DNA of 63,915 nt, the filler included, from Octopus bimaculoides (taxonomy: Eukaryota): assembly GCF_001194135.2 (NCBI RefSeq). It is 5 parts of 5 records of this genome, joined end to end, with 100 filler letters (N's around TTAATTAATTAA, not from the genome) between each part and the next. Parts side by side here need not be neighbours in the genome. Positions count along the whole stretch, not along the records: positions 26,716 to 39,319 come from NC_069008.1; 4 more parts are not named here. One strand, 5' to 3'. Positions 9,958 through 39,319 of this stretch are shown piece after piece. A program made the translations under genes and the position numbers. The notes beneath the pieces are model-generated. The model saw only the letters and a program-made list of their open reading frames with translations, was not told the DNA's origin and made no database searches. Each line of letters begins with the position of its first letter. Positions within the stretch are counted from its first letter, which is position 1.

Positions 9958-10062
9958 CTATCATCATCATCATCACTATCATCATCATCATCAACATCAT
10001 CATCACCACCATCATCACCATCACCACCATCGGCCATCATCATCATCATCATCATCATTATC
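9730..10062. repeat. (CAT)n and (CAC)n trinucleotide array
   Basis: Directly visible; explains the poly-Asp and poly-Met ORFs. Confidence 0.95.
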
Positions 10063-10067
10063 GTCTT

Positions 10068-10770
10068 AAGGACTGTCCGAAATGCGAGCAAAGTGATGAA
10101 ATGCAAGCTCATGTGTCGTGTCCCAGTATTGCTGAGTTGTGCAGTTATGTGGGACAGCTGCTGCCGCGAGTACGACAAATGTCACTGGCGACCGAATCCA
10201 TCGTGAGCATCGACCTTCCGGTTTACTTTAACAAGACAAGGAGGCGGTGTTCCTCTGTCTAGTGGCTACGGCGAAAGAGGCTGTGTGTTGGACGAGGCTG
10301 ACCGAAAGGATTAAGAACAGACACTCTCCTCTTCACTCAATCCCTCCTGACTATTTGGAGAACGGAAAGTGAAAGTAACGAGGGAAGAGTTACCCACCAC
10401 CACCACTTTCTCCTCCACCAGTCAAAATTGCGAAAAGGTAGGTGACTACGGCAAAACATGATTAGGATGAACGGGCTTGCTCTATGCATGAATCTGTAGA
10501 TTGTAGGGCAACAGTTGGGCGACAACTTGTGCCTTTGGTGATCAGGATAATCTTGAATCTATAGAGTTCCTTGATTGGCCCTACTTTGAGGTGCTCCTGT
10601 CTCAGGACGATAGTATCATAGATATGCAGTTATATTTTTGTATGCTATATATACTTTTAACTCATTCAATATTCGTTTCCTTTTCTTTCATCTTCTAAGT
10701 AAGCCCGCATGCAACTTGTAAACTATCCTTGTGATATCCCCCAACTCTAATGTCCCTACGTCAAATAAAG
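10068..10770 (+). mobile_element. L1/Tx1-like LINE 3' fragment (ORF2 C-terminal Cys region and 3' UTR)
   Basis: DCPKCEQSDE..AHV.CPSIAELCSYVGQLL...ESIVSI, frameshift, then AVFLCLVATAKEAVCWTRL. AATAAA near 10765. Confidence 0.65.
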
Positions 10771-12562: not shown

Positions 12563-13007
12563 TGTGTATGTGTGTGTGTATGTGTGTGTACATGCGTGCG
12601 TTCGTATGTGTGTGTGTGTGTTTTTGTGTATTAATGTATCTACTTTCTGTCTCATTATGTCGATATATATTTATATCTATCTATCGAGATATATAAATGT
12701 ATGCGTGTGTGTGTGTCTAAGTATATTCAGAGAGAGACAAACAGAGAGAGACAAACAGAGAGAGAGTGACAGAGAGAGAGAGAGAGAGAGAGAGATGGGT
12801 GCACATGAGATATATATAAAACACTGACATACGTTTCACGTGACACATTTTCACTCGTCCAGAAAAAATACGCGAGGCATTTAACACAAAAGTGCTTAAT
12901 AAATAATTCAAATAAATTTAATTATTTTAAAGCAATGACACAGTTATGTGAAAAGTGGAACGGAAATTGATGAATATCTCATATAACTTGTGTGTGTGAG
13001 TGCGTGA

Positions 13008-14555: not shown

Positions 14556-15304
14556 ATGTAGATGATGACGCTCGTGATAATTGTACAGGTGATGGTGATG
14601 ACGGATGTAGTAGAGAAAGTAGAAATGGTTGTACTAGTAATCGAAATGATGATGATGATGATCATGATGTTGATCATGATGACGGTGACGACAACGACGA
14701 CAACGACGACGACGACGGTGACAATGACAATGATGATGATAAAAGTGGTCGCTGTGATGATGACGGTGATAACGATGATGCTGATGACGATGACGATGAC
14801 GATGACTGCTGTAGAGTGGATGGTAGCCATGATTATAGTCACTGTGAAGTGGGTAGCTGAACGATGATTATACTTTTAGTGGCGATGTTCGATAATTTCA
14901 TATATTTATTCATAAATAAATTATGTGTTAATGAGAACTGCTTTAGATTAACTCTATGATTAAATTAACAGGTCTCTCTCCTTCAATTAGTGATCTGTTC
15001 CCTCATCATAGTTCCAATTTATTGAGAGTTAAATACAGACCGTAAGAGAACAGCGGTGTGTGTGTATGCGTTTGTACGCGTGTGTGTGTGTATGCGTTTG
15101 TACGCGTGTGTCTGTGTGTACGTGTAGGTGTGTTTATTCATATTCACGCACACCTACATACACGCACACATACATACATACACACAAATATATATTATGT
15201 TTTACTTGTTAGTCATTAGATTGTGGCCATGCTAGAGCACCGCCTTGTAGATATATATACATATACACACATACATATATATATATATATAATATTATAT
15301 TATA

Positions 15305-15710: not shown

Positions 15711-16400
15711 AGAGTTTACACCTTTGAGGGAAATTATCAGCTTCTTTCGAGAAATCCGGCCGAACAGTTCAAATTCTTTTAAGCGGTTTCTGGTGTAAAG
15801 CTGAAGTCAGTTTCATCAGATAATTGCTTGCAAATGTCCACTGCTGTTAGCATGCGGTTACCTTCAGAGAGCTTATGAATTCGCCGATCCGTCTATACTG
15901 TTGTTTTTCTCAGAGCGCCCGTTCTTTACCGTTCTTTGTATTGGCCAGTGACTTGGTAAAACTGCCATGCTTGAACACAAGCTATCTTGCTGCATGCTAA
16001 TTGCTTCCTACTGTTCATGAAGGACACGTTTTGCTGATGAAGCAACAAGGTCTTTGCTCTAGTAACTGGGCTGATACTACGACGCTTTCCCATTGTGAAT
16101 TGATGTGTAACAATGCCCGACTATTAAATAAAACAGTGCAGTACGACCAGCCATATGACCAGCCATTTAGCTTATTGATTTGCATAAACTTATTTTGTCA
16201 ACAATTTCTAATCATTTGAATTAATTAGGCATTAAAATTATTCGAATTGTAGAAAGATATATGATGCCTATATCATTCGAAAGAGAAAAAAATTCTACAT
16301 AAACTGTAAAAAGTAAAATAATTTTGTACAGTTTTGTTAAAAATATATTAATGAAGGAATAGAACTGTCATCATTGGTCTTAAAGTTATTTTGGCCAGTG
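15710..16400 (-). mobile_element. Tc1-like element 5' end and N-terminal HTH region, joined to the mariner half
   Basis: TA|CACTGGCCAAAATAACTTTAAGACC terminus at 16400. ATG at 16093 gives MGKRRSISPVTRAK...RTGALRKTTV*TDRRIHKLSEGNRMLTA...RNRLKEFELFGRISRKK. Confidence 0.75.
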
Positions 16401-16566: not shown

Positions 16567-16614
<48 letters not shown>

Positions 16615-17009
16615 CATGTGTAACTTGCTAACCAGTTTACTTGTCTTTGATCTAATTTTTAAAATACTTTTTTAATATTAATCTTTTTGTTTTTGATTAC
16701 TATTTTATTATAGCGGNNNNNNNNNNNNNNNNNNNNNNNNNNNNNNNNNNNNNNNNNNNNNNNNNNNNNNNNNNNNNNNNNNNNNNNNNNNNNNNNNNNN
16801 NNNNNNNNNNNNNNNNNNNNNNNNNNNNNNNNNNNNNNNNNNNNNCCCATAGCCATTCAATGTTTAAAATTAAGTCTTATTAAAACTTCTTTCAAAATTC
16901 CTATTTTCTTTACCACACATTAACTTCTATAGGTTGAACCATGTAAAATGTTAGAGAAAGAAGCCTAACTGTTTCTTGCAATACATACTAATACATGCGT
17001 CTAAAGCAA

Positions 17010-26715: not shown

Positions 26716-26995
26716 TATTCACACGTATATTTATCTACATTCATATTTTTATACATATTTATATTTATATTTCGTATATTTATATTTTAAATTTTAAATT
26801 TATTATATTACCATGTCATATTGGATATATTATCTTTCGAAATATTAAATATTGATTTCCTGAGTATATTATTGATAAGTTTATGAATTTATTAATAATA
26901 TAAAAACACATATATACACATTTATTTGCTCAAAATAATTGAGCACTCAATATAAGTTCAGTTATATATTCTTTTAGAATATTACTTATAAAAGT

Positions 26996-27050
<55 letters not shown>

Positions 27051-28585
27051 ATATATATGTATGTATATACATATGTATATGTATATATGTATGTATATAT
27101 ATATATGTATATCTATATACACACACACATACACACACACACACATATGCACACACGCACACAAAAACGGGCATCTCCATAGTTTCCGAAGGCCTTTTGA
27201 AGGTTCAGAAGGCATTGATCGAGCGAGATCTAGAGTGAAATACATTTTGCCCAAGATACCGCGCTCTCGAACTGAACCTGCAACCACTTGCTTATAGAGC
27301 GAACTTCTTAAACAGTTTTATGGCATAACAGAGACGCAATGTACACAAGACTGCCTTGTTAAGGTTCGATCTGATAGACATGCACTACATAACATCTCTC
27401 TCAAACCTTATATTGATCGCCCAGCGTTCCTCTACTGTGAAATAGAATATATTAAGACGCATTTATATACCAGCATATATAAATATATTCATTAATTGAC
27501 AAGACAATACGGAATTTGTTTGTACATGAATCTGTGAAATATTGGAGATGTTTAATAATAATCATTTCTCGTAAATAAGTAATATACTCTCAAATGCCTC
27601 CTGACACAAACACATTCACTTCATTGAACATATAAACGTAAGGAAGAAAACATGTGTGTTTGTATGTATGTAAGTATATATATAAAAATACATATATAAA
27701 TATATATANNNNNNNNNNNNNNNNNNNNNNNNNNNNNNNNNNNNNNNNNNNNNNNNNNNNNNNNNNNNNNNNNNNNNNNNNNNNNNNNNNNNNNNNNNNN
27801 NNNNNNNNNNNNNNNNNNNNNNNNNNNNNNNNNNNNNNNNNNNNNNNNNNNNNNNNNNNNNNNNNNNNNNNNNNNNNNNNNNNNNNNNNNNNNNNNNNNN
27901 NNNNNNNNNNNNNNNNNNNNNNNNNNNNNNNNNNNNNNNNNNNNNNNNNNNNNNNNNNNNNNNNNNNNNNNNNNNNNNNNNNNNNNNNNNNNNNNNNNNN
28001 NNNNNNNNNNNNNNNNNNNNNNNNNNNNNNNNNNNNNNNNNNNNNNNNNNNNNNNNNNNNNNNNNNNNNNNNNNNNNNNNNNNNNNNNNNNNNNNNNNNN
28101 NNNNNNNNNNNNNNNNNNNNNNNNNNNNNNNNNNNNNNNNNNNNNNNNNNNNNNNNNNNNNNNNNNNNNNNNNNNNNNNNNNNNNNNNNNNNNNNNNNNN
28201 NNNNNNNNNNNNNNNNNNNNNNNNNNNNNNNNNNNNNNNNNNNNNNNNNNNNNNNNNNNNNNNNNNNNNNNNNNNNNNNNNNNNNNNNNNNNNNNNNNNN
28301 NNNNNNNNNNNNNNNNNNNNNNNNNNNNNNNNNNNNNNNNNNNNNNNNNNNNNNNNNNNNNNNNNNNNNNNNNNNNNNNNNNNNNNNNNNNNNNNNNNNN
28401 NNNNNNNNNNNNNNNNNNNNNNNNNNNNNNNNNNNNNNNNNNNNNNNNNNNNNNNNNNNNNNNNNNNNNNNNNNNNNNNNNNNNNNNNNNNNNNNNNNNN
28501 NNNNNNNNNNNNNNNNNNNNNNNNNNNNNNNNNNNNNNNNNNNNNNNNNNNNNNNNNNNNNNNNNNNNNNNNNNNNNNNNNNNNN

Positions 28586-28653
<68 letters not shown>

Positions 28654-29079
28654 TGTTGTTGTAGTAGTAGTAGTGGTGGTGGTGGTGGTGCAAGCAACAA
28701 CTGCAGCAATTAAACCAACAATCACAATATTCTTTTTTTCCTTAATGATGGGATCGATGTTGAAGACATAATCCATTAAAAGCACAACAATTAAATTATG
28801 ATAATCACCATTTTGAATTTTACAACGTTTTTTCTTTTTTATATTTCGGGTTGGGGAAAGACAGAAAAAAATCGCCGTAGGGTGATATTTACTTCTATAT
28901 AATGCTGAATTAAAATTAGTGTGGAGAAGGTTGATTGTATGATAATACAGGTATGGACTCCATATTTTTTGGAAAAATCATGAGAAGTGTTCCATGGCTA
29001 AACTTATTTTAGTTAATGCTGCTTTGATCAAGACAGAAAGACAGGGTTATATGCAGTCTGAGAATGACGAAATACTTAC

Positions 29080-29240
29080 CATTGTGCCATTTGGTTTTCA
29101 AATTCGTTTCAGAGTAGAGGATTGTAGGGAAATGGTCTGATTTCTCCCAATCACATGCTAGGAAACCTTCGTTGATAGTCAACCAACCGAGGTCTTCCGG
29201 GCAACCATCATACTTGTGTGATATATAGAAACGACGTTTG
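29080..29240 (-). CDS. Exon 4b: distal copy of duplicated exon 4 with intact donor
   Basis: TCTTTTCTTTCGCCCCAAACAACAG acceptor, phase 2 compatible with exon 3. Reads KRRFYISHKYDGCPEDLGWLTINEGFLACDWEKSDHFPTILYSETNLKTKWHN. G|GTAAGT donor at 29079-29074. 161 nt, same length as 4a. Confidence 0.8.
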
Positions 29241-29574
29241 CTGTTGTTTGGGGCGAAAGAAAAGACGGACCACTTTCAGCTATTGTTGTTGCTATTCTAC
29301 ATTGTTACAGTTACAAAGCAGTTAAGCATAAGAACCGATTTGAAATAAACTTACAAAACTTTTCTAATAACTTTAATCTATCATTCAACAGCTTCATGTC
29401 TCGAAATTGGAGCAAAATACAGCCTTATAGTTTATACATACATATACACAAATCTCAGGCATACACATTTAATTATTAGACATTAACCATGAAAAGATGA
29501 CAACAGAGGAGGGAGAAATTCTAACAAATTTATCCCTCCACTGTTGTCATCTTGCAATTAAATGATGAGGATAG

Positions 29575-29610
29575 TTTCAACGTTTCGGATACCAGTCCTT
29601 CATCAGAAGA
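29575..29610 (-). ncRNA. Minimal hammerhead-like motif with intact CUGAUGA/GAAAC core, in the intron upstream of exon 4b
   Basis: TCTT-CTGATGA-A-GGA ctggta TCC-GAAA-CG-TT-GAAA. Palindromic AACGTT stem III. Stem I pairs poorly. Confidence 0.55.
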
Positions 29611-31323
29611 GAGACAAAAAGAAGCAATAAAAGAAAGAGGAAAGGTGGATGTAAAAGAAAATACGTTTACACATACATGCATAGAAGCATATTTGCATAC
29701 ATACATATATACATGCACGCAGACATACTAACAGAGAGACAGACAAACAGATGAAAGATACAAAGATAGTAGCTATTCATCCAAATATTAGATTTCAAAG
29801 CATCACATAAAATGTACCCAAAGAATCCAATCTAGACTTATCAAAGACAAATATAAGGTAATTATATTGATTTCTAACGAAGGCACAATGTCAGGAATTT
29901 AACAGAGAGAGCGCATGGAATTTCGCGGGTTAATTTCTTTTAATCGATCCTGACATGTTGAAGAACAAAACTGATGCCCAGTGATATGAAAACTGTCCAC
30001 AAATATCAGTAATGATCACTGTGATAAATACCATTCACACCTGTGGTTGTCCACTTATATTATTTCTCTCCTGGAGACAAAAGTACATTTGGTTAGTTAT
30101 AATAAATATATTATAAGCGGACCCACTTCACTGAACATACTGATGAGATAAATATCTCTGTATTCAATAAGGCGTGAACAGCGTTGTTATAGGTATTGAT
30201 GTGGGTGGTGGTGGTGGTGGTGGTGGTGGTGGTGGTGGTAGAAGTGAGAGACCGAACAAGAATCTGAAATCGATTCATATTCACGAGGACTATGTGTGAC
30301 CCACCCACGGATCTTTGGCAACAAATCAGGTAATCGGCAAACTTGGTTGCTCTGTAGTTCACCCACCAAACATATGATCCAGATTTGACTCCCACCTCCG
30401 ATTTTCACTTCTTCAGTCCAATAAAAAAAAAACTGTCTTTAAGGACAGTGGTTTGATGGACACAGATGAGGTTAAAATAGCTGCGAAGAAATGGGTAGAA
30501 TAGTTGCATATCTGAGGTGTGTTTTAAGGGAGATCTGAGATTAGGGCCCAACGACGGTGTAAATGCTGGAACATCCGATATTGTTCCTTTATTTGATAAG
30601 GTTGAAACAAAAAAAAATGAAAAAGAAAAAAGATAGGAAGGAGTGAATATTATTTTCTTAGATACCATTTATCTGAAGAATTGACCAGATGGGTACGCCT
30701 GGAGTGTGTTCGATCCTAAGCCATCTTAAAAATTCTAAAAGCAAATATAAGCGTTTGTTAGTTATTAGATACAGTATACCCGAATAGAAAACAGAATAGC
30801 TATGGATGGAAGCCTCGGGATCATAGGCTCAGCTGAATTACAGCTCCCCTAAATAGCTCGGAAGTCGCCATCTGATGAACAGGCGCTGGGTTTAAATGTA
30901 CAAAACAATAGCAGAGAAGTCGTGTAGCCCAGAGCAGCCTTCATTTATGACATCTATTAATTCAGATCATTGCATTTCTAGATTGTATTATTCAATCCAT
31001 CATACTTCTTTATCTTATTATTATTTTTTTGTTTTTGATTTTTGGTTTTTTGTTGACAGCTGTAACTGCTATTTTTAGCATCTAAAAGGACGACACGATC
31101 CACTCAATAAATTCTTGAATTTATAGAGTTGTTTCCCTTGAAAATAAATTATCTCCGTTAGAATCAGCAAATTACCTCCCTTTGGCATATTAGGTGACAG
31201 AAAAATACGTTATCAACAATACTAGACGTATCGCTATAGATGTCAAAACAGATATTGAGTTGTCAGGTGGATTCGTTAGATTTTTTTCCAATGTTATTGG
31301 AGTTAACGCACAAAAATATTTTT

Positions 31324-31324
<1 letters not shown>

Positions 31325-31390
<66 letters not shown>

Positions 31391-31532
31391 CAGACAGAGA
31401 AGACAGACAGACGAACAGACAGACAGATAGATAGATACCTACCTACTTATCTGCCTACGTACCTACCTAACACACATACATACGTACATACATACATACG
31501 TACACACATACATACATACATACATACATACA

Positions 31533-31562
<30 letters not shown>
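31325..31562. repeat. (GATA)n, (GACA)n and (CATA)n tetranucleotide arrays
   Basis: Directly visible. Many further (CA)n, (TA)n, (CT)n, (CATA)n and (GATA)n tracts occur throughout, usually flanking N gaps. Confidence 0.95.
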
Positions 31563-31563
<1 letters not shown>

Positions 31564-33515
31564 GTAGCAAACTCATAAGAAGCGGAGAGAGAACGTAAGT
31601 TCGTTTGCCCGAACATGAGAAATTATTGATTTCTCATTGGTTAAAAATTACTGGCCATATACGAATTATGAACTTCGTTGAAGAAATCTTTCACGGGGTT
31701 ACGGTTCTATGATTCGTGTATGAGTAGTTATAAAACCCTGATTTTCGGCAAAATCTCCAGTGTTCGTTGGATGGCCACTCAAATCCACGACACCTACCCT
31801 TTTGAGTATAGGCTAATATATATGCCATGTTCAATACTCAAATCCGACAATATTGAATTGTCGTGAAACCTTATAGTTAGAATGAGAAATTAGTTAATAT
31901 AAAATTTAAGTCGTAATTCTCTACGACGAAATGATTTGGTTTCTAAATTTCTATAAATGTAAAAAAGATGTATATAACAAATTAATGTAGAAACTTAATT
32001 CCTTTTACTTCTCGTTTCTTTCAACTTGTTGAATTTATTTCTGTATATTAATTAAACTGTATTTTTTTATGTGTAACGGTCAAAAAAATATAATCCATAT
32101 CTTCAACATGCATGTACGTAATGAACGCACGTTCAGCGTCTTGGTTTGATACATCATAACATTTACGCAGCCTAAACTAGGAGTTATGCTTAGTGATAAA
32201 TACTTATAATTAAGTTATAAGTAACGAGATTATCATTATAGCTTTTAATTAATAAACAATGATATTTGTTATAACTTACGAATGAAAACATTGTAAATAA
32301 GATATAGTATATCTCACACTTCAACGACCTGTTGTGATAACCAACCACATAAAACATACATATATATATATGCATACATAGCTACCCACCTACCTACATG
32401 CATACATACATACATACATACACATACATACATACATACATACATACATACATGCACACATACATACATACATACATACATACATACATACATACATACA
32501 TGCGTAAAACTCAGCCTGTCACCAAAATGATAGAGAATGAATCACAAACGAAATTTGGGATGGAATGGTAATTGTGTTAATTTTATTTAGAAGCAATAGA
32601 TGACTTATGCTAAATGGNNNNNNNNNNNNNNNNNNNNNNNNNNNNNNNNNNNNNNNNNNNNNNNNNNNNNNNNNNNNNNNNNNNNNNNNNNNNNNNNNNN
32701 NNNNNNNNNNNNNNNNNNNNNNNNNNNNNNNNNNNNNNNNNNNNNNNNNNNNNNNNNNNNNNNNNNNNNNNNNNNNNNNNNNNNNNNNNNNNNNNNNNNN
32801 NNNNNNNNNNNNNNNNNNNNNNNNNNNNNNNNNNNNNNNNNNNNNNNNNNNNNNNNNNNNNNNNNNNNNNNNNNNNNNNNNNNNNNNNNNNNNNNNNNNN
32901 NNNNNNNNNNNNNNNNNNNNNNNNNNNNNNNNNNNNNNNNNNNNNNNNNNNNNNNNNNNNNNNNNNNNNNNNNNNNNNNNNNNNNNNNNNNNNNNNNNNN
33001 NNNNNNNNNNNNNNNNNNNNNNNNNNNNNNNNNNNNNNNNNNNNNNNNNNNNNNNNNNNNNNNNNNNNNNNNNNNNNNNNNNNNNNNNNNNNNNNNNNNN
33101 NNNNNNNNNNNNNNNNNNNNNNNNNNNNNNNNNNNNNNNNNNNNNNNNNNNNNNNNNNNNNNNNNNNNNNNNNNNNNNNNNNNNNNNNNNNNNNNNNNNN
33201 NNNNNNNNNNNNNNNNNNNNNNNNNNNNNNNNNNNNNNNNNNNNNNNNNNNNNNNNNNNNNNNNNNNNNNNNNNNNNNNNNNNNNNNNNNNNNNNNNNNN
33301 NNNNNNNNNNNNNNNNNNNNNNNNNNNNNNNNNNNNNNNNNNNNNNNNNNNNNNNNNNNNNNNNNNNNNNNNNNNNNNNNNNNNNNNNNNNNNNNNNNNN
33401 NNNNNNNNNNNNNNNNNNNNNNNNNNNNNNNNNNNNNNNNNNNNNNNNNNNNNNNNNNNNNNNNNNNNNNNNNNNNNNNNNNNNNNNNNNNNNNNNNNNN
33501 NNNNNNNNNNNNNNN

Positions 33516-33895
33516 CAAGCACTCTGTCGGTTACGACGCCGAGAGTTCCAGTTGATCCGATCAACGGAACAGCTTGCTCGTGAAATTAACGTGCAAGTGG
33601 CTGAGCACTCCACAGACACGTGTACCCTTAACGTAGTTCTCGGGGAGATTCAGCATGACACAGAGTGTGACAAGGCTGGCCCTTTGAAATACGGGTACAA
33701 CCGAAACAGGAAGAAAGACCGAGAGAAAGTTGTGGTGAAAGAGTACAGCAGGGTTCGCCATTACCCCGCTGCCAGAGCCTCGTGGAGCTTTAGTTGGTTT
33801 CACTCAATAAACATTCACAACTCCGGTCTGGGAATCGAAACCGCGATCGCATGACCGCGAGTCCGCTGCCTTAACCACTGGACCATTGCGCCTCC
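33516..33895 (-). mobile_element. SINE family B, reverse orientation
   Basis: Reverse complement of the 48061-48445 element. Confidence 0.9.
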
Positions 33896-34071
33896 ACTAC
33901 GGGCGAAATACGGCTAAGCATTTCGTCCAGCGTGCTAACGGTTCTGCCAGCTCACCGTTTTAATTGCTTGTATAGTAATATAAGCATGGAGTCCATAAAA
34001 AGTGTTCCGTGGCTAAATATATTTTGGGTAACGCTGTTCTGATTAGGACAATAAAAAAAGCTTATAAACTG

Positions 34072-34255
34072 TCATATGACGACGAAATACTTATCAAGTT
34101 GCCATCTGGTTTTCCTAACTGTTTGAGAGTAGAGAATTGTAGGGAAATGGTTTGATTTCTCCCAATCACATACAAGAAAATTTTCATTGATAATCAACCA
34201 ACCGAAGTCTTTCGGGCAACCATCATGTATGTGTGACACATAGAAACGACGTTTG
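34072..34255 (-). CDS. Exon 4a: proximal copy of duplicated exon 4, donor lost, reads through to a stop (alternative terminal exon or pseudo-exon)
   Basis: CAGCAG acceptor, phase 2. Reads KRRFYVSHIHDGCPKDFGWLIINENFLVCDWEKSNHFPTILYSQTVRKTRWQL. The position of the donor reads G|ATAAGT (34094-34089). The frame continues DKYFVVI to TGA at 34074-34072. Confidence 0.7.
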
Positions 34256-34569
34256 CTGCTGTTTGGGGGTGAAGGAAAATACGAAGCACTTTCAGTTATT
34301 GTTGTTTATTAATCTACACTGTTAGAATTACAAAGCAGTTAAGACTAAGTACTGAATTTCAATAAACTTACAAGACTTTCCCGACAACTTTAATCTATCG
34401 TTCAACTGCTTCTGGAGCAAAACATAGCCTTATAATTTATACATATGCAGACACAAATACTCATGAATACACATGTATTTATTAGGAATTAACGATATAA
34501 AGGTGAAAACAGGGTGGGGGATAAATTTTAACAATTATTGTATTAATCTTACGATGAAATTATTGGGAG

Positions 34570-34605
34570 GTCTAACGTTTCGGATGCTAGTCCTTCATCG
34601 GAAGA
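34570..34605 (-). ncRNA. Paralogous hammerhead-like motif (core CCGAUGA), in the intron upstream of exon 4a
   Basis: TCTT-CCGATGA-A-GGA ctagca TCC-GAAA-CG-TT-AGAC. Confidence 0.5.
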
Positions 34606-34671
34606 AAGAGAGGTAAAAATGAAAGAAGAAACTACGCTCATACAAAGAGGCATACCAGAGTATATGCATAC

Positions 34672-34704
<33 letters not shown>

Positions 34705-34944
34705 TATGTGTATGTATACATGCATGAATGCATACATACATACATGCATACATACATACATACAGAGAAAGAAGCATGCATACTTACACACAAACAGATC
34801 GACAGAGAAACAGACAGATAAAAGATACATACTTGGTAGCTATTTATTCAAATATTGAATTCCAAAGTATGACATAAAATATACCCAAATAATTCAATCT
34901 ATACTATGGTAATAATATTGATTTGTAACGAAGGCACAATGTCA

Positions 34945-35155
34945 GAAATTTAACATAGAGGTTACATAGAGGTTACATAGAAGTTAATAGAGGTTAAATT
35001 TAACATAGAGGTTAAATTTAACATAGAGGTTACATAGAGGTTAATAGAGGTTAAATTTAACATAAATGTTACATAGAGGTTAATAGAGGTTAAATTTAAC
35101 AGAAATGTTACATAGAGATTAATAGTGGTTAAATTTAACAGAAATTTAACATCGA
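34945..35155. repeat. Minisatellite of ACATAGAGGTT and AAATTTA units
   Basis: Interleaved units containing the palindrome GTTAAATTTAAC. Confidence 0.85.
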
Positions 35156-35268
35156 GGAATTTTACTTGTTTATTTTTTCATCGATCCCAACATGATGAGC
35201 AACAAAGAAGGATTCAAATTTAGCATACACCGGTAATTATGTTATATAAATTGATGATAACAACTTAC

Positions 35269-35432
35269 AAAGCTCCATTGATTGAGAAAACATTGGTTTT
35301 GCCTGGTGTTAAATCGTTCCATGGAGAACTTTTCAGGTTTTTGACTGAGAACCAGTTTTCAAGGGTTGTATTTCGTCTATCAAAGACCATAGTTACCACA
35401 GCTGTTTCGTTTTTGTATAGCACAAGTTTTAC
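35269..35432 (-). CDS. Coding exon 3 of the same gene
   Basis: CTTGTCTTTTATTCAG acceptor, phase 0. Reads VKLVLYKNETAVVTMVFDRRNTTLENWFSVKNLKSSPWNDLTPGKTNVFSINGA. Ends TT|GTAAGT, phase 2. 164 nt. Confidence 0.88.
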
Positions 35433-35967
35433 CTGAATAAAAGACAAGTTACATATACACACATACATACATACATACATACATACATACATACATACAT
35501 ACATACACACACACACACGCACACATACATACACACATGTTGTTTCTGGAGAGAGTCATTCTTTTTTAATGCCTTATTCATTAACACACGCACCGGTTCA
35601 ATTTCCACTCATTTACGATTTCTCTTTCCTAATATTTTCGTTGCTTCTTGCAACCTCTTCATTAGTTGTTGACCCTGTCCGTTAATGCAGCTCCGATAAG
35701 GGACAGATTCAACAACTATTGAAAAGGTTGCAAGAAGCAACGAAAATTTTAGGAAAGAAAAATAATGAGTGGAAATTGAACCGGTGAGTGTGTTAATGAA
35801 TAAGGCATTAAAAACAGAATGACTCTCCCCAGACACAACAAAATATATTTCAACACGCAAATTCATATAAAGAATCTTGCAAACCAAATACAAAAACGAA
35901 ATTTGTATGTATATATATTTGTATATATATATGTATATATATTTGTATGTATATATATATATTTCTA

Positions 35968-36272
35968 GTAGTTAGGGCATTCGGCTCACGAACGTAAGGT
36001 CGTGAGTTCGATTCCCGGCGACGCGTTGTGTCCTTGAGCAAGACACTTTATTTCACGTTGCTCCAGTCCACTCAGCTGGCAAAAATTAGTTATACCTGCA
36101 TTTCAGACGGCCAGCCTTGTCACACTTTGTGTCATGCTGAATCTCCCCGAGAACTACGTTAAGGGTACACGTATCTGTGGAGTGTTCAGCCACTTTCACG
36201 TTAATTTCACGAGAAAGCTGTTTCGTTGATTGGATCAGCTAGGACCCTCGTCGTCGTAACCGACGGAGTGCT
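35968..36272 (+). mobile_element. CORE-like SINE sharing the family B 3' tail
   Basis: tRNA-like head GTAGTTAGGG...GAGTTCGATTCCC, then GTGTCCTTGAGCAAGACACTT (CORE-like), then the same ~170-bp tail as family B. Confidence 0.85.
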
Positions 36273-36276
36273 CCTA

Positions 36277-36325
<49 letters not shown>

Positions 36326-36558
36326 CTAAAGCTCTCTCACTTTCTTATTTCTCTCTCTCTCTCTCTCTCTCTGTATATNNNNNNNNNNNNNNNNNNNNNN
36401 NNNNNNNNNNNNNNNNNNNNNNNNNNNNNNNNNNNNNNNNNNNNNNNNNNNNNNNNNNNNNNNNNNNNNNNNNNNNNNNNNNNNNNNNNNNNNNNNNNNN
36501 NNNNNNNNNNNNNNNNNNNNNNNNNNNNNNNNNNNNNNNNNNNNNNNNNNNNNNNNNN

Positions 36559-36800
36559 CCACTGTATTGTACTAAAGGTACCATCCACTTCATCTGAATT
36601 CACGACCAGGTACTGCAATAGCCTGGGGTGCAGCTCTTCATTGCCCTACCACCAAAATTAAGAAATCTACATTAGGTAGAAGTAGATGTCTTCAAAAAGG
36701 AACTAAACATTCTCCTGTCCACAATAGGGGATGAACCAACGGCCCGACATGAAGTACAGACGAGGGTAACGAAATTAAACTCCCTTATACACCAAATGGG
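36559..36800 (+). mobile_element. CR1/L2-group LINE ORF2 C-terminal fragment
   Basis: KVPSTSSEFTTRYCNSLG...LRNLH*VEVDVFKKELNILLSTIGDEPT....QTR...NSLIHQ. Confidence 0.65.
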
Positions 36801-37036
36801 CCAACAGCTGCAACAAAGGCACACACATGAGAAAAATAAACAAAAACCACGGTGGTGCTCCAGCATGACCGCAGCCGCATGGCTGAAACGAATAAAAGAA
36901 TATATTGTGCCCGCGCGTGTGTGTGAGTATCTGTGTGTGTGTGTATCTGTGTGTCTGTGTGAGTGTGTCCCCCATTTATGTATCATATTAATGTGAGCGT
37001 ATCCTCATACCTAATTTCTCTTCTGCATTTGTCCAG

Positions 37037-37308
37037 AGATAATATCTGTTATGGACGTGCTGGGTGTGAAAACAGAATGCATACGGCAAGGAGACGAAAT
37101 TCGTCCCAACTGTGGCGTGTTAGAATGCTTCATGCATTTCTTCGGCGTTGGGCATCATGTTAATGACGTATACTTACAACTAGCCTTGCTTAGAGAAGAT
37201 ATGTCGCCACAGATGTATAAGAAATCAATGGATCAACAATACTTGTTACGAATAGCCGCCCGGTTGAATAAAGATCTGTTCTACGCAAAGGAAGCAGCAT
37301 TAGATTAA
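37037..37308 (+). CDS. Candidate terminal exon of an unidentified gene, antisense within intron 2 of the PAN-domain gene
   Basis: CTAAT branch-like motif, TTCTCTTCTGCATTTGTCCAG acceptor, ~90 open codons (IISVMDVLGVKTECIRQGDEIRPNCGVLECFMHFFGVGHHVNDVYLQLALLREDM...AALD), TAA, then AATAAA immediately after. No family recognised. Confidence 0.35.
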
Positions 37309-37417
37309 AATAAATATTTCTGTATCATGTTAAAGATAAATACATATATAAATACTTAGATTTACTGCGGTACACTTCAAGAGTACATGCAGCGTGAGTG
37401 TTTGTGTGTATACATAC

Positions 37418-37596
37418 CTGCTCAATTGGTAGATGGTTCCAGATATCAAGTATTGGGTGTCGGAAGAAATTTGGACAATATGTGCCATTGCATTTGTCCA
37501 CATTCCAAGTTGAAGGACTTCCTATATTGAGGAAGGAATTATAGATCAACGAATTTGCTCCCATTGATATGGCATAGGTTTTAATCCATTCACTTT
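37418..37596 (-). CDS. Coding exon 2 of the same gene
   Basis: TTTCAG acceptor. Phase 1 completes AAA (K) with exon 1. Reads SEWIKTYAISMGANSLIYNSFLNIGSPSTWNVDKCNGTYCPNFFRHPILDIWNHLPIEQ. CAG|GTATGT donor, phase 0. 179 nt. Confidence 0.88.
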
Positions 37597-37600
37597 CTGA

Positions 37601-37636
<36 letters not shown>

Positions 37637-37638
<2 letters not shown>

Positions 37639-38035
37639 TAAAACGAGAAAGCAACCATACTCTGGGATATGCCAATACACACAGATAGAGAAATTAAGGC
37701 AAATAGACCAGATATAGTTGTCAAAGATCATGAAGGAAAAAAATGCCTTCTAATTGATGTTTCAATACCAGCAGATGACAACGNNNNNNNNNNTAGTAGG
37801 TGCCTTAGGTATAATAAAAAAAATATTCAGACAAATACATAACAAAAACACCAGGACTTACAAATATATATAACATACAGAAAATTGCACTACTGGGTAC
37901 TGCACACATTCTACGCAAAACACTTTCAATACAGTAAACATAAGAGCACCACAGCAAACCACAGCACATACCCAAGGCGCACAGAGCTGCGCTCGGTAGT
38001 GAAGTGAAAGCACGTTATGAAAATATAACTACTGA
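37637..38035 (+). mobile_element. 5'-truncated Dong/R4-like non-LTR retrotransposon (RLE endonuclease) in (TAA)n, within intron 1 of the PAN gene
   Basis: ATILWDMPIHTDREIKANRPDIVVKDHEGKKCLLIDVSIP ... VGALG ... IQKIALLGTAHILRKTL. (AAT)n on both sides. Confidence 0.85.
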
Positions 38036-38148
38036 ATAATAATAATAATAATAATAATGATTTCATATTTTGGCAGGCATCTCTGGAGAGGTGTTAAGTC
38101 CATTGTATCGACCCCAGTATTCAGCTGGCATGCACTGCTCTCTCACTC

Positions 38149-38201
<53 letters not shown>

Positions 38202-38222
38202 TGATGATGGTGGCTCACTTAC

Positions 38223-38523
38223 TTCTGTAGAAGGACATCTCGTTGCTGTCATTCGCGCTGACGACTGTCATGATATCTTTCGATGAGTAATTCTTACAAA
38301 CATGGCTGACATTGTTGTAAGTGAAAAATTCCGATTGGCTGTTTAGAGAAATGGCGGCACATTTCAGTAGATTTCGTGTTGAGATGAATTGTTCTGTTGG
38401 AGATGCCTGAAGGTAACCATAGGAATAGCCAGGAGGCAAACGCTTGTAGTGGGCTTCATTAATTTCCTGATTCGAGGTGGCGGCCAGAATTGTTGTAAGG
38501 GTTAATATCAGCATTGTAGTCAT
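38223..38523 (-). CDS. Coding exon 1 of a secreted PAN/apple-like domain protein (signal peptide + PAN-like module)
   Basis: GCC-ATG at 38523, then MTTMLILTLTTILAATSNQ (hydrophobic leader) ... LLKCAAISLNSQSEFFTYNNVSHVCKNYS ... EMSFYR. Ends in phase 1 at a GTAAGT donor (38222-38217). 301 nt, no stops. Confidence 0.85.
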
Positions 38524-38577
38524 GGCTGGACTGACAGAAGGAAACCGGTAAATCGTGAATCTAGTATCAGCAGAGGG

Positions 38578-38623
<46 letters not shown>

Positions 38624-38657
38624 GAACATGCATACATATACACATACATATATATGC

Positions 38658-38688
<31 letters not shown>

Positions 38689-38772
38689 CATACATATACA
38701 TGTATTAAATAAAATGAGACAACAAAACCAAGGCTGTGTGGAATTTATAGGGCATTTATAAAGAGAAAGGTA

Positions 38773-38822
38773 GTCTTACAGCTGTTTCTGAGATATTAGG
38801 GGGATATCCCTTCATAGGAGAC
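38773..38822 (-). ncRNA. Hammerhead-like motif with decayed core, ~250 nt upstream of the PAN-gene ATG
   Basis: GTCT-CCTATGA-A-GGGATAT cccccta ATATCTC-A-GAAA-CAGCTG-TA-AGAC. 4-bp stem I, 7-bp stem II, palindromic ACAGCTGT stem III, GUA triplet. Confidence 0.6.
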
Positions 38823-39235
38823 GATATCAGAGAGTCCAACAGAGAGAAATAGTAGCGTTCAATATAAGGAGTTATTTTTGAAAAAGACGGACACAGGTAG
38901 TATAAAGGGAAATTAGGGAATAAAAATAAAAATATATTTTGGATGTTACAGTTGCGGTTCCATTATCTAAGGAAAGTGGTGTGTAGAATGGTTAGAAATG
39001 CTTCTTGTCCATGGTATGTAAATTCCGATAGGAGTTCATATTTTGTCATTACAAGTGGATAGTGTGGAGACATAAACTCCCTGGGACGTTCATTCAAAGG
39101 GGTCTTGTGGTCATTCAAAGGGGTCTTCTTTCACACCACAAGACCCCGTCGAGTGAACATCACATGGAACTTATGCCTCCACACTATCTGCGTGTAATAG
39201 CAAAATATGAACGCCTATCTATATACGATATACAT

Positions 39236-39315
<80 letters not shown>

Positions 39316-39319
39316 TTAT

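What the first reader, a model, noticed from the sequence alone, without database searches (positions are those of the whole stretch)
29575..34605. Each duplicated intron carries a sense-strand minimal hammerhead ~330 nt before its exon; the two could pair as a dimer in one pre-mRNA
Seen: CTGATGA-A-GGA-6nt-TCC-GAAACGTT before 4b and CCGATGA-A-GGA-6nt-TCC-GAAACGTT before 4a, both on the gene's strand and both keeping the AACGTT palindrome. Established: minimal type I hammerheads of Penelope-like elements have palindromic stem III and cleave as dimers. Inference: the duplication placed two halves in cis. The intact-core copy lies between 4a and 4b, so cleavage there could cut off 4b and favour the donor-less terminal exon 4a, acting as a ribozyme-linked isoform switch. 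Caveat: stem I pairing is poor in both copies.
Basis: partly seen in the sequence, partly recalled or inferred. Interest (0 to 1): 0.7.

Follow-up and report, generated by a model that had tools for sequence, protein, structure and literature searches.

The report
Decayed transposon hammerhead motifs in octopus intron
The two hammerhead-like motifs are real, but they are worn-down copies of a short repeat scattered through octopus genomes that carries a Penelope-type minimal hammerhead, and nothing supports the idea that they act as a ribozyme switch between two exons.

Summary
Both 28-nt motifs exist on the minus strand (29606-29579 and 34601-34574). That is the strand of Octopus bimaculoides gene LOC106871660. 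They fit the published metazoan Penelope-type "min-HHR" layout: CUGAUGA, one extra nucleotide before a G10.1-C11.1 pair, GAAA, and a loop-less palindromic ACGU helix III followed by U17.

They are two old copies of one insertion of a short dispersed repeat flanked by (TA)n/(TATG)n. A covariance model built from them finds 12 copies at about 9 independent loci in ~300 kb of octopus DNA, with compensatory changes in helices I and II.

The finding's copies are decayed:
- Helix I has 2 bp and helix II has 3 bp.
- Copy A carries U4->C.
- The predicted double-hammerhead free energy is positive.

Conservation across four copies in two species is only marginally above the intron background.

"4a" and "4b" are the 3' parts of two tandem gene copies. 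O. vulgaris keeps both copies whole. O. bimaculoides has lost exons 1-3 of the second, and its annotated model ends at exon 3.

The isoform switch is not supported. This is an ordinary transposon relic, and the repeat family itself is of modest interest.

The parts
29579..29606 (-). Copy B of the hammerhead-like motif: CUGAUGA-A-GGA-CUGGUA-UCC-GAAA-CGU-U. The core is canonical, helix II has 3 bp and helix I has 2 bp.
   Evidence: CM R1, 71.2 bits
34574..34601 (-). Copy A of the motif, with core CCGAUGA (U4->C). O. vulgaris copy A still has CUGAUGA.
   Evidence: 65.4 bits
29454..29664 (-). Repeat relic B: a ~210-bp block (pyrimidine-rich arm, hammerhead motif, 3' arm) lying between (TATG)n-like and (TG/TA)n-like simple sequence.
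34460..34639 (-). Repeat relic A: the same block with internal deletions. It is preceded by the (TG)13/(ATAC)12 arrays at 34673-34764.
28979..29909 (-). Duplicated unit B (most of intron 3 plus exon 4b). Its orthologue is O. vulgaris L004 31711-32625 (90.6% identity).
33994..34960 (-). Duplicated unit A (most of intron 3 plus exon 4a). Its orthologue is O. vulgaris L004 15534-16916 (80-86% identity).
35269..35432 (-). Exon 3 of LOC106871660. The annotated protein P0025 reads through the donor to a TAA at 35267-35265 and ends there.
34095..34255 (-). Exon 4a. The donor GT is changed to AT (34094-34093) and the frame runs on to a TGA at 34074-34072. O. vulgaris 4a keeps the GT.
29080..29240 (-). 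Exon 4b, with donor GT at 29079-29078. It is the orphan 3' part of a second tandem gene copy whose exons 1-3 are missing in O. bimaculoides.
29969..29970 (.). Junction where about 6.1 kb present in O. vulgaris (L004 25613-31711, holding exons 1-3 of gene copy 2) is absent. The window sequence is contiguous here.
32618..33515 (.). Assembly gap between the two copies. It is also present in the public record, and its flanks are colinear with O. vulgaris.

Best explanation
The two motifs are decayed copies of a Penelope-type minimal (loop-less helix III) type I hammerhead. The hammerhead is carried by a short (~210-280 bp) dispersed repeat of Octopus genomes that sits in (TA)n/(TATG)n simple sequence.

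One such element inserted into a microsatellite in intron 3 of an ancestral gene of this octopus-expanded secreted-protein family. The whole gene then duplicated in tandem, before O. bimaculoides and O. vulgaris split, which carried the element into both copies. O. bimaculoides later lost exons 1-3 of the downstream copy. That left exon 4b, with its intron remnant and motif, about 5 kb behind exon 4a.

The hammerhead most likely served the repeat's own RNA processing when the repeat was active (inferred from the literature on Penelope-like elements). In this locus it is a passive relic with no role in choosing between 4a and 4b.
For: Shown by tool results:
- The motif matches the min-HHR descriptor, including the extra nucleotide and G10.1-C11.1. 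These features are listed in PMC4209133.
- Independent copies at other loci share the core, the pyrimidine-rich 5' flank, GAAACGUU and the 3' flank: L004:31286(-), L007:20316(+), L006:77604(-).
- CM R1 finds 12 copies in 308,780 bases, with E-values from 4e-17 to 2e-5.
- Copies are bounded by (TA)n/(TATG)n.
- Helices covary. Pair 25/34 is G-C or A-U, pair 26/33 is A-U or G-C, and pair 11/48 is G-C, C-G or U-A. 79% of cells are paired, against 19-47% when partners are slid.
- The element is absent from intron 3 of paralogues. L001(-) has only (TG)n at that place, and the CM finds no hit in L001 or inside the L002 gene.
- O. vulgaris has the motif in both orthologous units, so the insertion predates the duplication and the species split.
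- O. vulgaris has two full tandem gene copies. O. bimaculoides lacks 6.1 kb holding exons 1-3 of copy 2.
- The local copies are weak: helix I 2 bp, helix II 3 bp, U4->C in A, and double-hammerhead free energy above zero. A better family member gives -7.3 kcal/mol.

From the literature:
- Penelope-like elements are present in octopus and expanded about 56 Mya, while the two species split 13-33 Mya (PMC13282606).
- Penelope-like elements show an insertion bias for microsatellites, (TA)n included (PMC8557442).
Against: - No Penelope-like ORF (RT plus GIY-YIG) was found next to any copy. The only RTs in the fetched loci are LINE-type, so the link to Penelope-like elements rests on motif architecture and target preference alone.
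- Rfam hammerhead models do not score any copy.
- One subfamily (5 copies) shares CUGUNGA (A6->U), and 3 of 12 copies have CCGA. This shows that the repeat spread or persists without a canonical core.
- The motif window is somewhat better conserved than the average intron window: 24/28 invariant against a mean of 19.1, in the top 2%. A weak constraint is not excluded.
Confidence: 0.8

Rival explanations
1. The two motifs pair through their palindromes in one pre-mRNA to form an active double hammerhead. Cleavage then decides whether the transcript ends with exon 4a or 4b.
For: - Both motifs are in the sense orientation in one scaffold, about 5 kb apart.
- Spacing of about 3 kb between hammerheads is normal for the terminal repeats of Penelope-like elements.
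- The motif block is in the top 2% of intron windows for conservation.
- O. vulgaris keeps canonical cores in both copies, and copy B there has GUC.
Against: - Helix I has 2 bp, helix II has 3 bp and helix III has 4 bp. The modelled dimer free energy is +2.9 to +4.8 kcal/mol, against local alternatives of -7.4 kcal/mol per monomer.
- Copy A has U4->C in the species concerned.
- By junction topology, the intact B core would cut at A's site, upstream of both exons.
- Even good min-HHRs of Penelope-like elements cleave poorly in vitro as dimers.
- 4a and 4b come from two genes.
- The gene model ends at exon 3, and no gene is called over 4a or 4b.
- The conservation excess is not significant after allowing for about 20 independent windows.
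Confidence: 0.03
2. A chance look-alike. The motif has no hammerhead ancestry and merely resembles the consensus.
For: - About 2,000 chance hits to the relaxed descriptor are expected per 2.7-Gb genome.
- Rfam does not call it.
- Helices I and II are minimal.
Against: - The expected count is 0.01 per piece, and 0 in 20 Mb when the extra nucleotide and G10.1-C11.1 are required.
- Homologous copies at unrelated loci have better helices and compensatory changes.
Confidence: 0.04
3. The conserved centre of the repeat is not a ribozyme. It is some other functional element, such as a protein or RT recognition site or a promoter. The canonical CUGAUGA in some copies would then be partly a product of CpG decay (CCGACGA -> CUGAYGA).
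For: - 3 of 12 copies, from different subfamilies, have CCGA at a CpG. L007 has CCGACGA, L004:31286 has CUGACGA and the finding has CUGAUGA, which reads as a CpG-decay series.
- Five copies share CUGUNGA.
Against: - Covariation in both helices.
- G10.1-C11.1 is invariant in 12 of 12 copies, and GAAAC is kept in 10 of 12.
- ACGU+H is kept in most copies.
- The architecture equals the published min-HHR consensus feature by feature.
- Within the finding's own locus, parsimony makes CUGA ancestral.
Confidence: 0.1

Closest known systems
Minimal hammerheads (min-HHR) of metazoan Penelope-like elements (Cervera & de la Pena 2014, PMC4209133; Lunse, Weinberg & Breaker 2017, cited through PMC6765202)
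   Same: - Type I topology with the CUGANGA...GAAA core.
- An unpaired nucleotide between A9 and G10.1, and a G10.1-C11.1 pair.
- No loop III and a palindromic 15.2-16.2 (ACGU), so activity is expected only as a double hammerhead.
- Short helix I.
- Mostly solitary, highly variable copies dispersed in the genome.
- Association with microsatellite targets.
   Different: - Helix II is 3-4 bp here, against 6-8 bp reported for most metazoan families.
- No Penelope-like ORF or terminal repeat was found beside any copy in about 300 kb.
- One subfamily has A6->U.
- The finding's own copies fail on helix I, and in copy A on U4.
Sm-alpha / Sj-alpha SINE-like retroposons of Schistosoma bearing a hammerhead (Ferbeyre 1998; Laha 2000; cited in PMC6765202)
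   Same: A short non-autonomous dispersed repeat of a few hundred bp whose best-conserved part is a type I hammerhead.
   Different: - The schistosome elements have a canonical hammerhead, with a helix III loop and loop-loop contacts, and a pol III promoter.
- The octopus repeat has a loop-less minimal motif and (TA)n-flanked ends.
- No promoter was examined here.
Metazoan non-LTR retrozymes (Cervera & de la Pena 2020, PMC7229834; bioRxiv 10.64898/2026.07.22.740005)
   Same: Small non-autonomous elements with type I hammerheads, proposed to derive from the terminal repeats of Penelope-like elements.
   Different: - Retrozymes are tandem arrays of 170-400-nt units that give circular RNAs. The octopus copies seen here are single units.
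- The preprint reports retrozymes as depleted from introns in vertebrates.
Conserved intronic self-cleaving ribozymes of vertebrates (amniote intronic hammerheads HH9/HH10; the CPEB3 HDV-like ribozyme)
   Same: A sense-strand ribozyme inside an intron that could cut the pre-mRNA.
   Different: - Those are single, complete, monomer-active ribozymes under strong purifying selection.
- Here there is no Rfam hit, the helices are incomplete, the core is mutated in one copy and the conservation is marginal.

Membership tests
Penelope-type minimal hammerhead (min-HHR) | Catalytic boxes C3-U4-G5-A6-N7-G8-A9 and G12-A13-A14 | tested here: met
   Copy B has CUGAUGA...GAAA. Copy A fails at U4 (CCGAUGA), while O. 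vulgaris copies A and B are both canonical.
Penelope-type minimal hammerhead (min-HHR) | An unpaired nucleotide between A9 and G10.1, and a G10.1-C11.1 pair | tested here: met
   There is an extra A followed by G...C in all 12 family copies. The feature is listed in PMC4209133.
Penelope-type minimal hammerhead (min-HHR) | Loop-less or tiny palindromic helix III (15.2-16.2 palindromic) followed by H17 | tested here: met
   The sequence is GAAA-C-G-U-U. ACGU is self-complementary, and position 17 is U (C in O. vulgaris copy B).
Penelope-type minimal hammerhead (min-HHR) | Helix II (4 bp canonical; 6-8 bp typical of metazoan Penelope-like families) | tested here: not met
   The finding's copies have only GGA/UCC (3 bp), with C.A as the fourth pair. 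Relatives have GAGC/GCUC, 4 bp.
Penelope-type minimal hammerhead (min-HHR) | Helix I of about 4-5 bp between the 5' flank and the sequence 3' of the cleavage site | tested here: not met
   The finding's copies have 2 bp (1-2 bp in the O. vulgaris heterodimer). Relatives have 4-5 bp, with a G-C/C-G exchange.
Penelope-type minimal hammerhead (min-HHR) | Occurs as genome-wide consensus families with covariation | tested here: met
   There are 12 copies at about 9 loci in 308,780 bases. Four pairs change on both sides, and 79% of cells are paired against 19-47% when slid.
Penelope-type minimal hammerhead (min-HHR) | Located in the terminal repeat of an element encoding RT plus GIY-YIG endonuclease | tested here: inconclusive
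   The long ORFs in the fetched loci are LINE-type (RVT_1 + zf-RVT) and none has GIY-YIG. Most published min-HHRs are also solitary. The octopus genome could not be searched as a whole.
Penelope-type minimal hammerhead (min-HHR) | Self-cleavage as a dimer | not testable with these tools
   Only thermodynamic modelling was possible. It gives +2.9 to +4.8 kcal/mol for the local copies.
Rfam hammerhead families (Hammerhead_1/3/II, HH9, HH10) | A match to the covariance model | tested here: not met
   There is no hammerhead hit at E<=10 in 12.6 kb or in 111-nt searches. The better family member L004:31286 is also missed, so the models appear blind to loop-less motifs.
Metazoan non-LTR retrozyme | Head-to-tail tandem units, each with a type I hammerhead | tested here: not met
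   All copies are single units between simple repeats. The A/B pair comes from a gene duplication that includes an exon.
C/D box snoRNA (considered because of UGAUGA) | C box plus a conserved D box (CUGA) and a terminal stem within about 70-120 nt | tested here: not met
   The only Rfam hit is an 11-bit snoU83D match at E=9.4. The downstream CUGA in copy B (gcCTGAg) reads CATGAG in copy A.

The most novel reading that the evidence does not exclude
The transposon-derived pair keeps a low level of chaperone-assisted double-hammerhead activity in read-through transcripts of the tandem gene pair. In O. vulgaris both cores are canonical and copy B has the favoured GUC site. The pair would then have been retained as a way to sever or terminate transcripts that run from one paralogue into the next.
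Probability: 0.03. Interest if true: 0.65.

Novelty: new member of a known kind. Interest (0 to 1): 0.2.

Why it matters
As proposed, this would have been a rare case of a ribozyme choosing between alternative 3' exons. The evidence points instead to a common situation: a relic of a hammerhead-bearing retroelement sitting in an intron and copied along with a gene duplication.

Three things are useful:
- Octopus genomes hold a frequent repeat family, roughly one copy per 30-70 kb in the sample. It is (TA)n-associated, carries a Penelope-type minimal hammerhead, and shows covariation.
- The Rfam hammerhead models miss this family.
- Apparent "alternative exons" in the fragmented O. bimaculoides assembly can be the remains of a tandem paralogue.

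Tried and rejected
- Rfam scans of the piece and of 111-nt sub-windows gave no hammerhead hit. A control on a better family member also failed, so the negative says little.
- ARAGORN found no tRNA.
- I searched the 5.8-billion-protein collection with a six-frame translation of the repeat block, hoping to catch spurious ORFs from other copies. Nothing scored at E<=10.
- Pfam scans of window ORFs and of long ORFs in the loci found no Penelope RT/GIY-YIG, only LINE RTs.
- I considered a C/D box snoRNA and rejected it (the D box is not conserved).
- I considered the A/B duplication being a haplotype or assembly artefact across the gap and rejected it. The copies differ by 20-29%, and each has its own orthologue in gapless O. 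vulgaris.
- The last exon (GYG.ADSMAIFI) was not found in the piece. In O. vulgaris it lies 430 bp after 4b, which would fall at the (CTA)n/gap 27709-28585.
- The paper by Lunse et al. 2017 and the supplements of PMC4209133 are not held.
- A look-up of P0050 found no record.
- The metagenome, viral and bacterial DNA collections were not scanned, because they cannot answer a question about octopus repeats.


Full report
**Where the window comes from**

The piece 26716-39319 is identical to GCA_001194135.2 CM046628.1 (Octopus bimaculoides), read in reverse. It is bounded by N runs in the record itself. It carries gene LOC106871660 on the minus strand. The annotated 215-aa product (P0025) maps to three exons:
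- exon 1, 38523-38224
- exon 2, about 37597-37415
- exon 3, 35432-35269

The annotated protein ends by reading through the exon 3 donor into a TAA at 35267-35265. No gene is called over the region of the finding. The protein has no Pfam domain. It belongs to a family expanded in Octopus, with relatives in amphioxus and a chiton.

**The observation**

One search finds the two motifs exactly as described, both on the minus strand. Copy B is 29606-29579 and copy A is 34601-34574. Exon 4b starts at 29240 and exon 4a at 34255, so the motifs lie 338 and 318 nt upstream. Exon 4a has AT where 4b has the GT donor.

The two copies are not independent. They lie in a ~0.95-kb duplication (28979-29909 against 33994-34960) that is 71.5% identical by BLAST; the MAFFT alignment gives a mean column identity of 83%.

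In 20 Mb of Markov-simulated octopus-like sequence, the relaxed descriptor is expected 0.01 times per piece. That descriptor is the core, a helix II of at least 3 bp, a loop-less palindromic helix III, and UH. It was never seen together with the extra nucleotide and a G10.1-C11.1 pair. The motif is therefore not a local chance event.

**The gap**

The N run 32618-33515 is in the public record too. Its flanks match the gapless O. vulgaris orthologous locus in the same order and orientation. Window 34832-33940 matches L004 15998-16916, and window 32617-32354 matches L004 19553-19820. In O. vulgaris that interval holds long (TATG)n arrays. No frame crosses the gap. The real spacing of the two motifs is unknown.

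**What the motif is**

Read with standard hammerhead numbering, copy B has these parts in order:
- the 5' flank (2.x)
- C3-U4-G5-A6-U7-G8-A9
- an extra A
- G10.1-G-A, then loop CUGGUA, then U-C-C11.1
- G12-A13-A14
- A15.1-C15.2-G16.2-U16.1
- U17, followed by the cleavage site
- the 3' flank (1.x)

Cervera & de la Pena 2014 list features that emerged beyond their search descriptor for metazoan minimal hammerheads of Penelope-like elements. Three of them are:
- a conserved G10.1-C11.1 pair
- palindromic 15.2-16.2 with little or no loop III

The same paper also describes a short helix I. The motif here has the three listed features, but its helix I, at 2 bp, is shorter than the 4-5 bp the paper describes. 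Only ACGU is the helix III palindrome.

**It belongs to a dispersed repeat**

I scanned about 109 kb and then about 300 kb of octopus DNA fetched through family proteins. The descriptor and simple patterns found further copies at unrelated places:
- L004:31286(-), CUGACGA-A-GAGC-UCU-GCUC-GAAACGUU, with a 4-bp helix I
- L007:20316(+)
- L006:77604(-)

They share the pyrimidine-rich 5' flank and the AARCCYUCC 3' flank with the finding's copies. They are units of about 210-280 bp bounded by (TA)n or (TATG)n.

A covariance model built from seven sequences then found five more copies, with E-values from 7e-10 to 2e-5. That makes 12 copies at about nine independent loci in 308,780 bases.

The helices covary:
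- pair 25/34 is G-C in the finding's subfamily and A-U in the others
- pair 26/33 is A-U against G-C
- helix I pair 11/48 is G-C, C-G or U-A
- 79% of cells are paired, against 19-47% when partners are slid by 1-3 columns

**Link to Penelope-like elements**

Penelope-like elements are present in octopus genomes and expanded about 56 Mya (PMC13282606). They show a bias for microsatellite targets, including (TA)n (PMC8557442). The link of this repeat to those elements is an inference from architecture and target. No RT/GIY-YIG ORF lies near any copy, and the RT ORFs in the loci are LINE-type.

**History of this locus**

- The O. vulgaris orthologous locus (L004) has the motif in both units. Copy A is at 16229-16256 (CUGAUGA...GUU) and copy B at 32064-32091 (CUGAUGA...GUC).
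- The same intron in three paralogues lacks the block. L001(-) has only (TG)n at that position, and the model finds nothing in L001 or inside the L002 gene.
- So one element entered a microsatellite in intron 3, and the gene was then duplicated before the species split.
- In O. vulgaris the duplication is of the whole gene. Copy 1 has exon 1 at 10001-10300, exon 2 at 12685-12855, exon 3 at 14951-15099 and exon 4 (4a) at 16576-16737. Copy 2 has them at 28925-29215, 29683-29862, 31482-31643 and 32426-32590 (4b). A last exon at 33020-33064 follows only copy 2.
- In O. bimaculoides, window 30224-29969 matches L004 25359-25613 and abuts window 29970-29043, which matches L004 31711-32625. About 6.1 kb holding exons 1-3 of copy 2 is therefore missing.
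- "4a" and "4b" are thus the tails of two paralogous genes. The loss of the donor in 4a is specific to O. bimaculoides.

**Is the pair likely to work?**

- The finding's copies are poor members of the family. Helix I has 2 bp, and helix II has 3 bp with C.A as the fourth pair.
- Copy A has U4->C, which is derived within this locus by parsimony.
- I wrote out the double-hammerhead structure explicitly and evaluated it with ViennaRNA. The results are:

| Pair | Double-hammerhead free energy (kcal/mol) |
|---|---|
| A+B | +3.6 |
| B+B | +2.9 |
| O. vulgaris pair | +4.8 |
| L004:31286 homodimer | -7.3 |

- Each local monomer has alternative folds of about -7.4 kcal/mol. In copy B, a longer 81-nt stretch folds to -11.9 kcal/mol with GAUGAAGGA paired to a downstream UCCUCAUC.
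- The literature reports very low in vitro activity even for intact min-HHR dimers of Penelope-like elements (PMC6765202).
- In a loop-less double hammerhead, 15.x of one copy pairs with 16.x of the other. The strand carrying H17 and 1.x then belongs to the other copy. The core of one copy therefore cuts the site of the other (my inference from the junction topology). The intact B core would cut at A's site, upstream of both exons. The B site would depend on A's mutated core.

**Conservation**

In a four-way alignment (A and B in two species), the 28-nt motif has 24 invariant columns. Intron windows average 19.1 with sd 2.8. The motif is in the top 2% and ties with one other intron block. The binomial p is 0.026 before correcting for about 20 independent windows. 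Exon 4 is no better conserved than the intron (68% against 67% invariant). The excess is marginal.

**Rfam**

There is no hammerhead hit at E<=10 in the piece or in 111-nt searches. There is also none for the better family member, so the models do not see loop-less motifs and the negative is uninformative.

**Verdict**

The thing itself is a decayed, duplicated relic of a hammerhead-bearing short repeat. The proposed dimer-based isoform switch has no support and several points against it.

Novelty lies only in the octopus repeat family, which is a new member of a known kind. The whole genome could not be searched with these tools, and no expression data were available.

Noticed in passing
window 29494-29553 (-); L004 about 32117-32176 (+): Copy B has a near-perfect ~26-bp hairpin directly 3' of the hammerhead motif (-38.7 kcal/mol, z = -8.8). 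It is kept in O. vulgaris copy B (-32.4 kcal/mol, z = -6.4) but absent from both A copies, where the 5' arm is deleted. It gives weak miRNA-like Rfam hits only. Its origin and function are unknown.
   Followed up: partly
L006 77566-77618(-), 102532-102584(-), 105762-105814(+), 115633-115689(+); L004 40005-40061(+): One subfamily of the repeat shares the core CUGUNGA (A6->U), with helix II GAGC/GCUC and loop GUAG. The repeat therefore spread, or at least persists, with a non-canonical hammerhead core.
   Followed up: partly
window 34600 (copy A); L007 20317; L002 about 15276: Three of 12 copies, from different subfamilies, read CCGA instead of CUGA at a CpG. CCGACGA (L007), CUGACGA (L004:31286) and CUGAUGA (the finding) look like a CpG-decay series. 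The ancestral state of the family cannot be decided from this sample.
   Followed up: partly
window 35538-35840, with motifs at 35719-35749 (+) and 35632-35662 (-): There is a 300-bp inverted repeat (88% self-complementary) in intron 2. Its arms carry UUGAAAA-G-GUUGC-AAGAA-GCAAC-GAAAAUUU, which fits the U3-A8 variant min-HHR descriptor. It is also present at the orthologous O. vulgaris site (L004 15300-15270). In AT-rich DNA this relaxed pattern may well arise by chance.
   Followed up: partly
window 29969/29970 against L004 25613-31711: O. bimaculoides lacks 6.1 kb that in O. vulgaris holds exons 1-3 of a second tandem gene copy. The O. vulgaris annotation (P0031, 250 aa) fuses parts of the two copies into one model.
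   Followed up: yes
window 29080-29240 and 34095-34255 against L004 32426-32590 and 16576-16737: Exon 4 is no better conserved than its intron (68% against 67% invariant columns). Between orthologues the exon is less alike than the intron (B: 87.5% against 93.2%). This fits relaxed or diversifying selection, or pseudogenes.
   Followed up: partly
window 33518-33960 and 36089-36272: A dispersed repeat that looks tRNA-like by eye (ARAGORN calls no tRNA) lies just after exon 4a. A 90%-identical partial copy sits in inverted orientation at 36089-36272, and further copies occur in L001, L002 and L004.
   Followed up: no
window 34953-35157: A minisatellite with a 39-bp period (about 4 copies, 92% matches) fills the start of intron 3 in unit A. 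It is absent from unit B.
   Followed up: no
L001 12522-14486 (+), 15736-17760 (-); L007 23018-26473 (-): There are long intact LINE-type ORFs (RVT_1 + zf-RVT) within or beside family genes in O. vulgaris.
   Followed up: partly
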